A stretch of 64,000 nt of DNA from Amphiscolops sp. MND2022 (taxonomy: Eukaryota), in NCBI GenBank assembly GCA_964187785.1, contig CAXLNC010001113.1:62001-126000 (forward strand), given 5' to 3'. Below the pieces are notes generated by a model. The model was not told the origin of the DNA, made no database searches, and was given only the letters and a program-made list of their open reading frames with translations. Positions 46,292 through 64,000 of the stretch are shown here, in pieces. Numbering within the stretch: position 1 is the first letter of the stretch; the number at the start of each line of letters is the position of its first letter. The translations under genes and the position numbers were made by a program.

Positions 46292-46749
46292 TGTGTAGGG
46301 ACTTGAATAATCGAAGGTGATGAATTAGCTCTCGCAATTGGGATGGTATCTGCGCTATCATCAAATCCCCTATCGCTGGCAGCTCGGGCTCTTACAGGTG
46401 GAACCATCTCAAAAGATGAACTCCCCACTGCATCCCCGACTGGTGTATAAGGATGTGCACGTTGTGGCCCACTTGTGGGGGTACTGGCGGGAACGAGTGA
46501 TCCCTCAGAGATTGGCACTTCAGCAGCGTCTGTGACTAGGGTTCTGAGACGAGGGGGCCCTGGGATATTGGTCCGACCTCTTTCCTTCCTCTCTATTTCA
46601 GCAAGACTAGTCTCAGCCCTGATGCGACGCTTTATTCGAGGGCTCAAGGACGATCCCTCAGTATCAGCAGCACCACGGGCATGCACATGCCCTACTACCA
46701 GATCTTCACCCAATGGGAGGCGCGGTCCCCCTATTCCCGATTCCACCAT
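46292..46749 (-). CDS. LTR-encoded ORF (152 codons + 2 nt), predicted Gag N-terminal extension
   Basis: MVESGIGGPRLPLGEDL...SLAEIERKERGR...NSSPSIIQVPT. Same 458-nt length and end phase as in copy A. Confidence 0.65.
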
Positions 46750-47073
46750 GCCTCTCGGGCCGGTGAAATGGTACTGGGAACTGCCCCTTCCGGGGAAAGA
46801 TTCTGTGTGAGGCTACTTACTTGTGACAACAAGATTCTAGCTATGTGCTCACAACAATTGTTCCTGTGATGTACCACTATCCTCTATATTCAGGCGTCAC
46901 GCTCCTGCACTTCCTTGATCGGAAGTCTAAGCCCAAATGGCTTGAGGAGATGACATTTCGTCATGCAAATGGATTCAAGTCAAGGACAGAACCTCTCCTG
47001 CACCTGACTCGACAACAAGCTCTACAGATTGCCCGATCCCCAAGGGGCTTGCAAAGAGAGAGGCCCATTGACA
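46292..47073 (-). repeat. 3' LTR of copy C (782 bp, TG...CA)
   Basis: Begins TGTCAATGGG after the PPT and ends GTCCCTACACA. Homologous to the LTRs of A and B. Confidence 0.88.
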
Positions 47074-47086
47074 CTCCCCCTCGCGG
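47074..47086 (-). promoter_or_regulatory. Polypurine tract of copy C
   Basis: CCGCGAGGGGGAG before TGTCA. Confidence 0.9.
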
Positions 47087-47212
47087 CAACCTGGAGCGAG
47101 TTGTCCCTTCTGTGAAACAACGAAAACAAAGTCCTACATGCCATCACAGCATTGGCGCCGTTCATCATCATGGGGTAGGGCTTGCCTTCATACTCACGCT
47201 TCCGGTGACGTC

Positions 47213-62139: not shown

Positions 62140-63195
62140 CCAAAATCTTTAGAGACTGATTGGACAAAACCACGTAGCCACCTTTCACCTCCTTCATCGT
62201 CACGTCCTTCAACATCTCCCATGCGCTTTCAGCCGGCTCGAAGTCGTCATAGATTTTGCTCAGCTGCCATTCATGAATCCACAGGAAGGTTGACGAGAGG
62301 TACGGGTGGAGTCTCATCGTAGTGGCCATCATCATTGAGTAGTACATCAGAAGACCAAGGTACTTGAGAATTCCAGAGGTTTCCTTCGCTTCTTGAGCTA
62401 TGCGCAAGTCCATCACTGTCTGCTCCAAGGTGGTCACCGGATCATCGATCAGTCGAGGCAAAGTGATCGGTGCCACTTCGGGCGGCTGACTTAACTTAGT
62501 GAGATACTCACCCACAACATTAGACAGCCACATCATACTTGTCATCAACGCTGACTGCCATCCATGTTGTCCCAGCCGTTCCACGTCCCCTTTCGGAGCA
62601 TTGTCACACAACGACACTTGGATACCCACATTCGCAAAGGTGAACTGAGATGGATCTTGCCCCGAGGTTTGTCCCACTCGTGAGGCCCTTTCCGGGTGAT
62701 CGCTTCCTACATCTGGTTCGCCCTTCCGGGTCTGAATGAGCAACTGCGAATAGTCACTCGGCACATAGTCATAGGGCTTAATGAGTTTCCCATTGGAGTG
62801 CAGCAGCCACTTTCCAGTGTTGGTTCTGGAGACTGTGAAGTTCAACGACTCCTCCGTGCACTTGCATGCCCTTGCATGAGCTGTTCGGGTCCAGGACAGG
62901 TGCGTAACACTGTCATGTTGCTTTCGCATGTTATCACCATGCTTCACAAGAAACGCATCTTCCAACCAATCTTGTAAACCGCACTCCTGACCAAGGTTCA
63001 GTACTAGGTAGATGACATCAACCAATTCAGCTAACACATCGTGTGCAACTCCTGACTTGATGGCCTCTTCGATCTCACGTACCTCCTCAAGAAGCATCCT
63101 CCCATACTGCTGTCCTCTTTCATAACTAACGATTTTCATTGACGTCCCTTCCGGGAGACCCATGACGCTATTGAACTCCCGGGTCAACAGTGCCA
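62140..63195 (-). CDS. Two tandem MazG-like (all-alpha NTP pyrophosphohydrolase) domains; the first retains the acidic motif, the second is degenerate
   Basis: REFNSVMGLP...EEVRE...AELVDVIY...AFLVKHGDNMRK...GKLIKPYDY matches the EExxE/ExxD pattern and the DR2231/PRA-PH-like layout. Confidence 0.78.
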
Positions 63196-63519
63196 GCTGC
63201 TGAAGTGAACATCCAGTAGGTCCTGGGGATACTGCATGAGGTCTTGGGATCTGATCGACCAACTGACTCAATGCCTCGTCCACCTTTTCTGCCCTTCCGG
63301 GTCCAGTCTGCAATGCCGAGATAGAAGTGTCAATGGTTTCATCTTGGGCCTGTTCCTCACGAACGGTGGCCTCTCTCGCCTCCACATCGATCACAGACTC
63401 CTTCGGCTGGACTCTAGGCTCAGCAGATGCCCTTCCGGCGTACAGGTGGACTGGGAAGCCCTTCGACTCAAGATTCATCCAATCACGATCACTCAGTCGC
63501 TCCAAATGGCTAGGAGTGA

Positions 63520-63997
63520 ACAACGTCACAGAGAAGCGCTCCCCTTTGGTCACTTCACGGACTCGATGTTCAATAATGTCAGCCGTGAACTCCGTCCAGA
63601 CCAAAGGAACCGCACACGACTGCCACTCATCATCTCTCAGCATCTCCAGGTGACCGCCCTCATACTGTCCGAAGTTAATGGTGTAGTTGAGATACTCCTC
63701 ATGGTTGCGATAGTCCTTGTGCTTGTTCAATCCTTGTCCTTCCGACAGTTGAGTCACGTATATTCCCAGATAAGGTAGCTCCTTGGAGCAACTCGCCGCT
63801 AGTGCGTGCACCTTCATCAAGACCTCCTGGTAACGTTCCTGGAAAGTCCTCTTCACCACGCATCCCTGCTGCAAGCCTCTATTGGTTTGTGCTCCAAGAA
63901 ACAGTGCTCGCGATCCTCCCGCAATACTTGTCCTGTTATTCTGGTAGGGCCATGCGATTCTCTGGATTGTCTGCTGGGCATCGATAATTTTCTTCAT
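63520..63997 (-). CDS. 2OG-Fe(II) dioxygenase domain in the pol polyprotein
   Basis: HKDYRN (63713-63721), FGQYEGGHL, distal His in EHRVREVT (63566-63568) and ERFS (RxS). Confidence 0.85.
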
Positions 63998-64000
63998 ATA

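What the first reader, a model, noticed from the sequence alone, without database searches (positions are those of the whole stretch)
46292..64000. Giant (~22 kb) Ty1/copia retrotransposon with a second ORF of about 3,300 codons led by a DEAH/RHA RNA helicase
Seen: LTRs, PBS, PPT and the order PR-IN-RT-RH identify a copia element. Between the pol stop and the PPT lies a ~9.9-kb same-strand ORF that begins with a complete DEAH helicase (motifs I-VI plus HA2). The same architecture is in B, and its tail is in A. The three copies are diverged, with many synonymous changes and conserved protein motifs, so ORF2 is part of the element and not a one-off captured host gene. Known: copia elements are usually 5-10 kb; sizes above 20 kb are known mainly from gypsy-type Ogre elements; extra ORFs at this position are normally env-like. 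I know of no described copia lineage carrying an SF2 DEAH helicase. Inference: the helicase remodels the very long genomic RNA or its RNP for packaging, reverse transcription or escape from silencing.
Basis: partly seen in the sequence, partly recalled or inferred. Interest (0 to 1): 0.92.

Follow-up and report, generated by a model that had tools for sequence, protein, structure and literature searches.

The report
Giant copia retrotransposon carrying a helicase
The window holds three decayed copies of a 22-kb copia-type jumping gene, probably from a dinoflagellate, that also encodes its own RNA helicase fused to a huge unknown protein, two nucleotide-handling enzymes and about 25 small RNA hairpins, a combination I found described nowhere.

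Summary
The element lies on the minus strand. Copy C (46291-64000) runs off the window, copy B (23661-43720) has both LTRs, and copy A (9430-11761) is a 3' fragment. The order PR-IN-RT-RNase H, a copia-type RT, a 783-bp LTR and a polypurine tract are all present. A 9.9-kb second gene follows pol. It starts with a DEAH/RHA helicase (E 1e-31 to Prp43/DHX15) and continues into about 2,500 residues with no known fold.

No window copy is intact. Better-preserved relatives in one ENA assembly show the full plan, and one keeps helicase and tail in a single open frame. The RT-helicase linkage recurs in at least four lineages that form one clade. dN/dS of ORF2 is 0.07-0.17, as low as pol, so ORF2 belongs to the element.

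- a 2OG-Fe(II) oxygenase and a MazG-like NTP pyrophosphohydrolase between PR and IN (a thymidylate kinase in a sister lineage);
- a conserved in-frame TGA between ORF1 and pol;
- the ORF1 start inside the LTR;
- a conserved GNRA-hairpin motif found only on the sense strand, about 25 per element.

Function is inferred only. I rate it a new variant of a known kind. The host is unproven.

The parts
46291..64000 (-). Copy C of the element. Its 5' end runs off the window (about 4.1 kb missing by comparison with B), so the full size is about 21.8 kb.
   Evidence: Self-BLAST collinear with B over its whole length. About 90% nucleotide and 92-95% amino-acid identity to ENA locus L002.
46291..47073 (-). 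3' LTR of C (783 bp). It starts TGTCAATGG and ends CACAG. It contains the ORF1 start codon about 330 nt from its start, so about 150 ORF1 codons are LTR-encoded.
   Evidence: Alignment of L005's 5' LTR with the 3' LTRs of L002, C, B and A. L005's ORF1 ATG lies inside its LTR.
47074..47084 (-). Polypurine tract (GCGAGGGGGAG) abutting the 3' LTR.
   Evidence: Identical in C, B, A and L002, immediately 5' of the LTR start.
47213..57145 (-). ORF2 of C: helicase plus tail, 9.9 kb. It is broken: helicase part at least 4 frame changes and 1 stop; tail at least 18 frame changes and about 3 stops. The last 1,601 codons are open.
   Evidence: counts; collinearity with L002; dN/dS 0.07-0.17.
54768..56727 (-). 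DEAH/RHA helicase region of ORF2: RecA1, RecA2, winged helix, part of the ratchet. Motifs: I 56683-56700, II DEVH 56377-56388, III 56284-56292, V 55718-55738, VI 55574-55597.
   Evidence: PDB phmmer: DHR1/DHX37 1.5e-13 and Prp43 3.4e-15 for the two open pieces. The intact L002 homologue gives 1.3e-31. Motifs.
49097..49216 (-). PHD-like zinc finger in the ORF2 tail (C-x2-C-x10-C-x2-C-x4-H-x2-C-x9-C-x2-H).
   Evidence: Ligands kept in 68-97% of aligned rows. Pfam PHD E 0.0055, 17.1 bits, below the cut-off of 24.
57146..57292 (-). Spacer between pol and ORF2 (about 150 nt). It is conserved above coding DNA and holds a GNRA-hairpin motif at 57235-57247.
   Evidence: Alignment of C, B, L002 and L005; motif search.
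57293..61948 (-). pol of C (IN-RT-RNase H). It is broken: at least 5 frame changes and 1-2 stops. IN HHCC plus DDE lies at 61022-61456, RT motif A near 58861, YVDD at 58433-58444.
   Evidence: Pfam rve and RVT_2. The L002 homologue scores RVT_2 59.9 bits against a cut-off of 31.6. Conserved catalytic residues. Collinear with a canonical copia pol.
61949..64000 (-). C-terminal 683 codons of ORF1 in C. They are open and end in the conserved TGA (61949-61951), after which pol follows in the same frame.
63518..63751 (-). 2OG-Fe(II) oxygenase domain in ORF1. H94-x-D96, H145 and R155 of the 683-residue piece are conserved at 93-100%.
   Evidence: Pfam 2OG-FeII_Oxy_3 E 1.6e-4 here; 13 of 23 relatives match, best E 7.6e-6. 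Conserved triad.
62975..63181 (-). MazG/PRA-PH-type all-alpha NTP pyrophosphohydrolase domain in ORF1. E305, E306, E309, E325 and D328 are conserved.
   Evidence: Pfam PRA-PH 22.6 bits against a cut-off of 21.3. All 23 relatives match, best E 4e-8.
23661..43720 (-). Copy B. Both LTRs are present, and the 5' one is cut by the N gap at 43721-43920.
23661..24435 (-). 3' LTR of B, with its polypurine tract just upstream at 24436-24446.
43417..43720 (-). Visible 3' part of B's 5' LTR, 98% identical to the matching part of its 3' LTR.
   Evidence: 306-nt HSP, 98.04%.
43398..43416 (-). Primer-binding-site candidate directly after the 5' LTR (GTTATGAGCCCAAACCTGG). It lies inside the ORF1 coding sequence.
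   Evidence: 36/37 nt identical between B and L005, where surrounding DNA is 72-83% identical. Not matched to a tRNA.
33717..43416 (-). ORF1 plus pol of B. It is broken: ORF1 at least 2 frame changes; pol at least 5 frame changes and 2 stops; one deletion of about 0.7 kb. It holds the CCCH zinc finger (40306-40362) and the protease active site LLDTGA (40129-40140).
24577..33609 (-). ORF2 of B. It is broken: helicase part at least 4 frame changes; tail at least 8 frame changes and 1-4 stops; one deletion of about 0.9 kb; one inverted piece of about 1.1 kb.
   Evidence: Pfam DEAD E 2.4e-6; counts; collinearity.
9430..11761 (-). Copy A, a 3' fragment only: LTR 9430-10267 plus about 1.5 kb of the end of the ORF2 tail.

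Best explanation
Shown:
- The window holds three old, inactivated copies of a family of giant (about 22 kb) Ty1/copia-type LTR retroelements. It belongs to a clade of such elements, probably in a dinoflagellate or related protist.
- The family's gene plan can be read from better-preserved natural relatives. The LTR is about 780 bp and contains the ORF1 start.
- ORF1 has about 2,018 codons, in this order: a coiled-coil region in the gag position, a CCCH zinc finger, an aspartic protease, a 2OG-Fe(II) oxygenase, a MazG-like NTP pyrophosphohydrolase.
- One in-frame TGA separates ORF1 from pol (IN-RT-RNase H, about 1,550 codons).
- After a conserved 150-nt spacer comes ORF2, about 3,350 codons: a DEAH/RHA helicase of about 820 residues fused to a tail of about 2,500 residues with a PHD-like finger and no membrane segments. 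Then come the polypurine tract and the 3' LTR.
- ORF2 is an element gene kept by purifying selection while the family spread.

Inferred:
- pol is made by read-through of the TGA.
- The helicase is an ATP-driven 3'-to-5' RNA translocase that works on the element's own 21-kb RNA or RNP. It would unwind structure for translation, packaging or reverse transcription. That is the job for which retroviruses borrow host DHX9 (my own knowledge).
- The oxygenase and the NTP pyrophosphohydrolase condition the nucleotides or bases of the element's nucleic acids.
- The roughly 25 sense-strand GNRA hairpins are recognition sites on the genomic RNA.
For: - LTR pair 98% identical within B against about 70% between copies. 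LTR bounds and polypurine tract.
- PR-IN-RT-RH order and catalytic motifs. RVT_2 59.9 bits.
- RT-RH tree: giant lineages monophyletic 200/200, on the Symbiodiniaceae-copia side of a 200/200 split.
- Helicase E 1.3e-31 to Prp43, and only DEAH/RHA hits.
- RT-helicase-tail linkage in L001, L002, L003, L004 and L005.
- In L003 the helicase start is fused in frame to pol (P0032: thymidylate kinase, rve, RVT_2 and DEAD in one 2,626-residue ORF). In L005 helicase and tail are one open frame.
- dN/dS: helicase 0.07-0.10, tail 0.14-0.17, pol 0.07-0.10.
- TGA followed by a same-frame pol in four lineages.
- Catalytic residues of the oxygenase and the MazG-like domain conserved at 93-100%.
- Hairpin motif: 27 hits against 0.43 expected, sense strand only, covarying closing pair, all three codon phases, conserved above background.
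Against: - No window copy is intact, and no expression or activity data exist, so every functional step is inference.
- The tail has no recognisable fold (AlphaFold pLDDT 51.6; Foldseek nothing better than E 0.7). It has no BLASTP match to the tail of the thymidylate-kinase lineage, so only the helicase is a clade-wide component.
- PBS not matched to a tRNA. Target-site duplication untested. LTR ends TG...CAG rather than TG...CA.
- No capsid-type gag domain was recognised.
- Host taxon unproven.
- The family was seen only in one ENA assembly besides the window.
Confidence: 0.8

Rival explanations
1. ORF2 is a counter-defence gene. Helicase plus tail would protect the element from host silencing (RNA interference or chromatin marks) rather than serve replication directly. 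The PHD-like finger would read chromatin, and the oxygenase would act on a silencing mark such as 5-hydroxymethyluracil.
For: - Viral SF1 helicase domains carried by insect TRAS LINE elements are reported to suppress RNA silencing weakly and are considered accessory (PMC6338049).
- 5hmU marks and silences transposons in dinoflagellates and is made by a dioxygenase (PMC11572971).
- Retrotransposons repeatedly capture DNA-modifying enzymes (PMC5890265).
- PHD-like finger in the tail.
- The tail evolves faster than pol (dN/dS 0.15 against 0.07) and differs between lineages, as expected for a conflict interface.
Against: - The helicase itself is as constrained as pol, and in one lineage its start is fused to pol. 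That fits a core replication role better.
- The oxygenase is of the PF13640 type, not a recognisable TET/JBP or AlkB.
- There is no data on silencing.
- This rival does not exclude the best explanation.
Confidence: 0.25
2. The element is closer to an endogenous retrovirus-like agent, and the ORF2 tail is a structural or exit/entry protein taking the place of env.
For: - The position of ORF2 between pol and the polypurine tract is where env-like ORFs sit in sireviruses and retroviruses (abstract of PMC7264820).
- A conserved spacer with a motif that also sits upstream of the ORF1 start suggests a separate expression unit.
Against: - No hydrophobic 19-residue window above 1.6 (Kyte-Doolittle) anywhere in two tails of 2,495 and 2,745 residues.
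- No match to viral structures or families.
- No relatives in IMG/VR.
Confidence: 0.07
3. ORF2 is a passenger. It would be a host DHX gene captured once and carried without function, or an artefact of nested insertion or mis-assembly.
For: - The helicase is of the cellular DEAH/RHA type.
- The window has N gaps, and B carries an inverted piece.
Against: - Same position and orientation in three window copies and five ENA loci from an independent assembly.
- Linkage kept over lineages with only 24-31% helicase identity.
- dN/dS 0.07-0.17.
- No second LTR pair or other element signatures inside ORF2.
- The sense-strand hairpin motif runs through ORF1, pol and ORF2 alike.
Confidence: 0.03

Closest known systems
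Ty1/copia (Pseudoviridae) LTR retrotransposons of Symbiodiniaceae (SmTCL1-4; proteins named RE1/RE2 or 'Pol polyprotein' in Symbiodinium and Cladocopium)
   Same: - LTRs and IN-RT-RNase H order.
- RVT_2-type RT.
- Nearest named RT relatives (25-28% identity), on the same side of a 200/200 split in the RT-RH tree.
- Already large: about 10 kb for SmTCL3 (PMC5776459).
   Different: - About twice the size.
- Extra ORF2 with a DEAH helicase and a giant tail.
- Oxygenase and MazG-like domains between PR and IN.
- No helicase is mentioned for SmTCLs.
Ty1 of yeast and Tca2 of Candida (copia-type elements; my own knowledge)
   Same: - ORF1 starts inside the LTR and the PBS lies within the coding sequence, as in Ty1.
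- gag and pol are in the same frame, separated by a UGA, as reported for Tca2.
   Different: - Those elements are about 6 kb with no accessory genes.
- Here about 150 codons are LTR-encoded.
- Read-through is inferred only from conservation of the TGA in four lineages.
Insect TRAS/LINE retrotransposons with a captured viral SF1 RNA helicase domain (PMC5563155, PMC6338049)
   Same: A retroelement carrying a complete RNA helicase that is conserved and thought to be accessory.
   Different: - Those are non-LTR elements with an SF1 helicase of RNA-virus origin, inside the ORF2 polyprotein.
- Here it is an LTR element with an SF2 DEAH/RHA helicase of the cellular type, leading a separate 3,350-codon ORF.
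Giant Ty3/gypsy elements (Ogre, Retand) and plant LTR elements with additional ORFs (abstracts of PMC11963269 and PMC7264820)
   Same: - Size above 20 kb, or a long stretch between pol and the 3' LTR.
- Extra ORFs beyond gag-pol.
   Different: - Those are gypsy-type, not copia-type.
- Their extra ORFs are not helicases. Much of their extra length is non-coding, whereas here nearly all 21 kb is coding.
LTR elements and retroviruses with nucleotide- or base-handling enzymes: dUTPase (Tcn1-like gypsy, PMC2864245; non-primate lentiviruses, PMC4261571), AlkB-type demethylase in orchid gypsy elements (PMC9289625), DNMT or DAM methyltransferases (PMC5890265; bioRxiv 10.64898/2026.05.21.726589)
   Same: Accessory enzymes inside the polyprotein that act on nucleotide pools or on bases. 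MazG, HisE/PRA-PH and dimeric dUTPases form one all-alpha superfamily (PMC2954211 abstract).
   Different: - Here the NTP pyrophosphohydrolase is MazG/PRA-PH-like, not a trimeric dUTPase.
- The oxygenase is of the PF13640 type, not a recognisable AlkB.
- A sister lineage adds a thymidylate kinase (98 bits).
- Substrates are unknown.
Cellular DEAH/RHA helicases (Prp43/DHX15, DHR1/DHX37, DHX8, DHX9)
   Same: Motifs I-VI with DExH, and RecA1-RecA2-winged helix-ratchet order.
   Different: - About 25-30% identity, with no clear closest paralogue.
- About 145-residue linker between the RecA-like halves.
- OB fold not detected.
- Fused to a 2,500-residue tail and encoded by a mobile element.

Membership tests
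Ty1/copia LTR retrotransposon | Two long terminal direct repeats flanking the coding region, more alike within a copy than between copies | tested here: met
   B: 98% over the 304-306 bp visible, against about 70% to C and A. Full 783-bp LTR defined with L005 and L002.
Ty1/copia LTR retrotransposon | Domain order PR - IN - RT - RNase H (integrase upstream of RT) | tested here: met
   LLDTGA in B and L005 ORF1. HHCC plus D,D35E, then DVSTAFL/YVDD, then an RNase H region collinear with canonical copia P0086.
Ty1/copia LTR retrotransposon | RT of the copia (Pfam RVT_2) type and placement among copia RTs | tested here: met
   RVT_2 59.9 bits in L002 and 64.4 in P0032 against a cut-off of 31.6. The truncated open piece of C gives 29.5. 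All 118 pol hits are RVT_2 proteins. NJ tree.
Ty1/copia LTR retrotransposon | Polypurine tract abutting the 3' LTR | tested here: met
   GAGGGGGAG immediately before the LTR start in C, B, A and L002.
Ty1/copia LTR retrotransposon | Primer-binding site complementary to a host tRNA next to the 5' LTR | tested here: inconclusive
   A conserved 37-nt stretch follows the 5' LTR in B and L005. No tRNA gene in the window or loci to compare with.
Ty1/copia LTR retrotransposon | LTR termini 5'-TG...CA-3' | tested here: inconclusive
   The LTR starts TG. It ends CACAG in five of six LTR ends (CACAT in A), so there is one extra base after CA.
Ty1/copia LTR retrotransposon | Short target-site duplication flanking the insertion | not testable with these tools
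   B's 5' flank is lost in an N gap and C's 5' end is off the window. No fetched locus holds both ends of one copy, and there are no solo LTRs.
Ty1/copia LTR retrotransposon | Gag with a capsid domain and a CCHC zinc knuckle | tested here: not met
   No gag/UBN2/Retrotrans_gag hit. ORF1 has a coiled coil and a CCCH (not CCHC) finger about 50-90 residues before the protease. This is a difference in one gene. It does not remove the element from the RT-defined group.
DEAH/RHA helicases (SF2) | Helicase motifs I-VI with DExH in motif II | tested here: met
   GTGKST, DEVH, SAT, TNVNQTG and QQGGRSGR in C. Only DEAH/RHA chains among 60 or more PDB hits.
DEAH/RHA helicases (SF2) | C-terminal winged-helix, ratchet (HA2) and OB-fold domains | tested here: inconclusive
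   The alignment to Prp43 runs to its residue 585-622 (winged helix and part of the ratchet). No Pfam HA2 or OB_NTP_bind hit. Homology between element lineages continues to residue 821.
2OG-Fe(II) oxygenases | HxD...H iron triad and a basic residue about 10 positions after the distal His | tested here: met
   H94, D96 and R155 at 100% and H145 at 93% in 15-17 rows. Pfam PF13640 scores stay below its cut-off (23 against 27 bits) but recur in 13 of 23 relatives. No PDB sequence hit, and the structure model failed (pLDDT 34).
MazG / all-alpha NTP pyrophosphohydrolases | EExxE...ExxD metal-binding helices | tested here: met
   E305, E306, E309, E325 and D328 conserved at 95-100%. PRA-PH is above its cut-off, and 23 of 23 relatives match.
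PHD finger | C4-H-C3-type zinc ligand spacing | tested here: inconclusive
   Ligand pattern present and mostly conserved. Pfam PHD 17.1 bits, below its cut-off of 24.
env-bearing copia (sirevirus-like) or endogenous retrovirus | Extra ORF encodes a membrane protein (signal peptide or transmembrane segments) | tested here: not met
   No hydrophobic segment in 2,495- and 2,745-residue tails.

The most novel reading that the evidence does not exclude
A whole clade of protist (probably dinoflagellate) copia-type elements has grown into 22-kb, almost fully coding retroelements that bring their own replication-support kit. The kit is a DEAH RNA helicase, a nucleotide-pool module (MazG-like pyrophosphohydrolase, and thymidylate kinase in a sister lineage), a 2OG dioxygenase, and a family-specific set of about 25 GNRA hairpins along the genomic RNA. 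Together these would adapt reverse transcription, packaging and integration to a host whose DNA carries 5-hydroxymethyluracil as a transposon-silencing mark. The enzymes would control which thymine analogue enters or stays in the cDNA. The hairpins would be dispersed packaging or helicase-loading signals.
Probability: 0.2. Interest if true: 0.9.

Novelty: new variant of a known kind. Interest (0 to 1): 0.8.

Why it matters
LTR retrotransposons are thought to need only gag and pol and to borrow RNA helicases from the host. Here a mobile element has kept its own SF2 helicase under selection as strong as that on its reverse transcriptase. It did so across lineages that differ by more than 70% in that protein.

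The element also carries base- and nucleotide-handling enzymes. The probable host group has unusual DNA chemistry (5hmU), which was recently tied to transposon silencing.

This widens the known gene repertoire and size range of copia-type elements. It gives a natural system for asking what limits retroelement genome size. It also points to a possible link between retroelement replication and modified bases.

The dispersed, covarying hairpin motif is a concrete candidate cis-signal that can be looked for in other long retroelement RNAs.

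Tried and rejected
Tried without result:
- Pfam on all long open pieces of the tail: nothing except a sub-threshold PHD.
- PDB sequence and profile searches with the tail and with ORF1: nothing.
- AlphaFold of the oxygenase-MazG piece with 23 sequences: pLDDT 34, unusable, so not sent to fold search.
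- AlphaFold of 1,200 tail residues with 91 sequences: pLDDT 51.6, with a few confident islands. Foldseek against PDB gave nothing better than E 0.7.
- Exhaustive HMMER search with the tail: 244 representatives, all short fragments. All 20 checked come from ENA, none with a name.
- IMG/VR scan: none. JGI metagenome scan: one chance-level 90-residue helicase match.
- tRNA and Rfam scans: none.
- Pfam on ORFs outside the elements (6663-7412, 14910-19185, 45068-45733): none, so the host could not be identified.
- A weak ATG8-like match in pol (E 0.04), taken as chance.

Considered and rejected:
- Tandem host-gene array. The LTR identity pattern, polypurine tract and IN/RT argue against it.
- 'ORF3' in the 3' LTR as a separate gene. 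It is the LTR-borne start of ORF1.
- The hairpin motif as a peptide repeat or as 12-nt insertions. It occurs in three codon phases and at sites that align without gaps in sister lineages.

Caveat on break counts: nucleotide alignments overcount (paired small gaps) and frame chains undercount, so counts are given as lower bounds.

Full report
**What is in the window.** The finding lies on the minus strand. A self-comparison shows three collinear copies of one repeat:
- A: 9430-11761, a 3' fragment.
- B: 23661-43720.
- C: 46291-64000, running off the window. By comparison with B, about 4.1 kb are missing, which gives about 21.8 kb.

B and C are 72-80% identical in DNA. B's two ends carry a direct repeat that is 98% identical over the 304-306 bp visible before an assembly gap (43721-43920, left untouched). 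The same repeat is only about 70% identical between copies. That is the signature of LTRs.

**Relatives.** The open 1,601-codon end of ORF2 in C finds proteins only in ENA assembly ERZ25074608. Their contigs give five loci:

| Locus | Relation | Content |
|---|---|---|
| L002 | same family; coding frame 92-95% identical to C | ORF1, pol, helicase and tail largely open |
| L005 | same family | 5' LTR; open ORF1 of 2,018 codons; open pol; ORF2 open for 1,722 codons from the helicase into the tail, up to the contig end |
| L001 | tail 37% identical | RVT_2 - DEAD - 2,758-codon open frame |
| L004 | pol 48% identical | two ORF1 genes, pol, then an 885-residue helicase |
| L003 | pol 38% identical | one 2,626-residue protein with thymidylate kinase, integrase, RT and the helicase start, followed by a further ORF of more than 2,587 codons |

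Cluster sizes of up to about 150 sequences show that these families are abundant in that assembly.

**LTR, PPT, PBS.**
- Aligning L005's 5' end with the 3' ends of L002, C, B and A fixes the LTR at 783 bp in C (46291-47073). It begins TGTCAATGG directly after the purine tract GAGGGGGAG and ends CACAG.
- The ORF1 start codon lies about 330 nt inside the LTR. About 150 codons of ORF1 are therefore LTR-encoded, and the candidate primer-binding site lies inside the coding sequence.
- This explains the codon-like substitution pattern of the LTR and the apparent small ORF at each 3' end.
- The 37 nt after the 5' LTR are 36/37 identical between B and L005, which is well above the surrounding 72-83%. 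No tRNA was available to test complementarity.
- A target-site duplication could not be tested.

**Genes.** The order below combines the window copies and the open relatives.
1. **ORF1**
   - Coiled coil.
   - CCCH zinc finger (B 40306-40362).
   - Protease LLDTGA (B 40129-40140).
   - 2OG-Fe(II) oxygenase (C 63518-63751). HxD, the distal His and an Arg ten residues later are conserved at 93-100%.
   - MazG/PRA-PH-type NTP pyrophosphohydrolase (C 62975-63181). EExxE...ExxD is conserved, and all 23 relatives match Pfam PRA-PH.
   - About 340 further residues.
2. **A single TGA**, after which pol continues in the same frame in all four lineages examined. This points to read-through.
3. **pol**
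   - Integrase HHCC and D,D35E.
   - RT DVSTAFL and YVDD.
   - An RNase H region collinear with a canonical copia polyprotein to within ten residues of both ends.
4. **A spacer of about 150 nt**, more conserved between B and C than the coding DNA.
5. **ORF2** (C 57145-47213)
   - Its first 820 residues or so are a DEAH/RHA helicase. The two open pieces in C hit DHR1/DHX37 (1.5e-13) and Prp43 (3.4e-15). The intact L002 homologue hits Prp43 at 1.3e-31. Every PDB hit is a DEAH/RHA enzyme. Motifs I-VI are intact in C.
   - The remaining 2,500 residues or so have no transmembrane segment. They have no Pfam or PDB relative and no structural match.
   - They do have one PHD-like zinc finger (C 49097-49216).

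**State of the window copies (counts only).** Counts are lower bounds from frame chains. Nucleotide alignments give higher numbers because of paired small gaps.

| Copy | Gene | Breaks |
|---|---|---|
| C | ORF1 part in the window | open |
| C | pol | at least 5 frame changes, 1-2 stops |
| C | helicase part | at least 4 frame changes, 1 stop |
| C | tail | at least 18 frame changes, about 3 stops |
| B | ORF1 | at least 2 frame changes |
| B | pol | at least 5 frame changes, 2 stops |
| B | helicase part | at least 4 frame changes |
| B | tail | at least 8 frame changes, 1-4 stops |
| B | whole copy | two deletions of about 0.7 and 0.9 kb, one inverted piece of about 1.1 kb |
| A | - | a 2.3-kb 3' fragment |

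Some single-base frame changes could be assembly errors.

**Is ORF2 part of the element?** Yes.
- It lies between pol and the PPT inside B's LTR pair.
- It recurs in every related lineage.
- The lineages that carry it form one clade in an RT-RNase H neighbour-joining tree (200/200). That clade sits on the Symbiodiniaceae-copia side of a 200/200 split from plant, insect and fungal copia.
- The helicases of different lineages are homologous over residues 139-821 at 24-31% identity.
- Nei-Gojobori dN/dS between B and C is 0.073 for the helicase, 0.157 for the tail and 0.075 for pol. L002 against C, B and L005 gives the same picture, with ORF1 at 0.08-0.13.
- The tail is less stable than the helicase. 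The window family's tail has no BLASTP match to the tail of the thymidylate-kinase lineage.

**A motif noticed in passing.**
- The 13-mer TCCCYGGAARGGG occurs 27 times in the window (up to 1 mismatch) against 0.43 expected. All hits are inside B and C and all are on the element's sense strand. The few opposite-strand hits lie in B's inverted piece.
- It reads as a 3-4-bp G/C stem closed on a GGAA loop.
- The closing pair covaries (CCCC-GGAA-GGGG or CCCT-GGAA-AGGG). Rarer forms keep pairing at the next position as well.
- It sits in ORF1, pol, helicase and tail in all three codon phases, at sites that align without gaps in sister lineages. It also sits 40-70 nt upstream of both the ORF1 and the ORF2 start codons.
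- Sites are kept more often than background 12-mers: 25/25 against 0.675 for L002 to C, and 14/19 against 0.285 for L002 to B.
- Sister lineages L001 and L004 have none, and L003 has two.
- I read these as dispersed RNA signals specific to this family. Their role in packaging, helicase loading or expression is open.

**Mechanism.**
- Shown: the anatomy, the enzyme classes, conserved catalytic residues and selection.
- Inferred: pol is made by read-through of UGA. ORF2 is expressed from the conserved spacer or by reinitiation. The helicase translocates 3' to 5' on the element's 21-kb RNA and clears structure for translation, packaging or reverse transcription. That parallels the use of host DHX9 by retroviruses (my own knowledge).
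- The MazG-like enzyme plays the part that dUTPases play in some retroviruses and LTR elements (PMC4261571, PMC2864245). It would keep an unwanted nucleotide out of the cDNA.
- The oxygenase acts on a base or on protein.
- In dinoflagellates, 5hmU is made by a dioxygenase and marks silenced transposons (PMC11572971). A link of the oxygenase, MazG and thymidylate-kinase module to that chemistry is therefore an attractive hypothesis, but it is untested.

**Novelty.**
- Searches of the held literature found helicases only in non-LTR insect elements (viral SF1 type; PMC5563155, PMC6338049).
- They found no copia or other LTR element with a DEAH helicase, a MazG-like domain or a thymidylate kinase.
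- Known dinoflagellate copia elements are about 10 kb with IN-RT-RH only (PMC5776459).
- Repbase, Dfam and GyDB could not be searched.
- I rate it a new variant of a known kind.

**Limits.**
- The host is unidentified.
- The family is seen in one other assembly only.
- There are no expression data.
- There is no confident structure for the tail or the ORF1 enzymes.

- The outputs list open segments and match bounds from which places of breaks can be read. From then on, only counts were printed.

Noticed in passing
window 46784-62022 and 25768-40539 (27 sites, e.g. 46784-46796, 57235-57247, 33665-33677); L002, L005: Dispersed 13-nt motif TCCCYGGAARGGG on the sense strand only. It reads as a G/C stem plus a GGAA tetraloop with a covarying closing pair, about 25 per element, against 0.43 expected. 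It occurs in all genes and all codon phases and upstream of both ORF start codons. It is conserved above background and absent from sister lineages. A second repeated 9-mer, CCCGAGAGG (GAGA loop), occurs 7-8 times in L002 and L005.
   Followed up: partly
window 62975-63751 (C); B 39145-41379; L005 3130-9183: A 2OG-Fe(II) oxygenase and a MazG/PRA-PH-type NTP pyrophosphohydrolase, both with conserved catalytic residues, sit between the protease and the integrase.
   Followed up: partly
L003 10298-10762 (P0032 residues 100-254): A sister lineage of giant copia elements carries a thymidylate kinase domain (Pfam 98 bits) at the start of its pol polyprotein. The helicase start is fused in frame to the same polyprotein.
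   Followed up: partly
window 61949-61951 (C); L002 2635-2637; L005 9184-9186; L004 9929-9931; L003 9986-9988: ORF1 ends in TGA, and pol follows in the same frame for 1,549-2,631 codons in four lineages (TGA followed by C in three of them). This suggests stop-codon read-through as the ORF1-pol expression strategy.
   Followed up: partly
window 46291-47073 (LTR of C); L005 2803-3588: The ORF1 start codon lies about 330 nt inside the LTR, so about 150 codons are duplicated in the 3' LTR, where they mimic a small extra ORF. The PBS candidate lies within the coding sequence.
   Followed up: yes
window 49097-49216: PHD-like C4HC3-type zinc finger, the only recognisable feature in the 2,500-residue ORF2 tail. 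It hints at chromatin reading.
   Followed up: partly
P0001 / L003 17878-25638: The ORF2 tails of the window family and of the thymidylate-kinase lineage show no BLASTP similarity, although the helicases in front of them are homologous. L001 has a pol 61-78% identical to L002 but a tail only about 40% identical, and none of the hairpin motifs.
   Followed up: partly
window 8200-9010: Satellite of 23-24-bp units (13 or more copies), with parts in inverted orientation to each other, just 3' of copy A.
   Followed up: no
window 43921-46290: AT-rich spacer (34% G+C) between copies B and C, with two N gaps and local repeats (44393-45358). It has no similarity to the elements.
   Followed up: no
window 11762-23660: About 12 kb between A and B with plus-strand ORFs of 459, 317 and 591 codons (14910-19428, crossing an N gap). 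It has the opposite GC skew, no Pfam hit and no match in the fetched loci. Its identity is unknown.
   Followed up: partly
L002 pol residues 1244-1293: Weak ATG8/ubiquitin-like match between RT and RNase H (Pfam E 0.041, PDB E 0.04). Probably chance.
   Followed up: no
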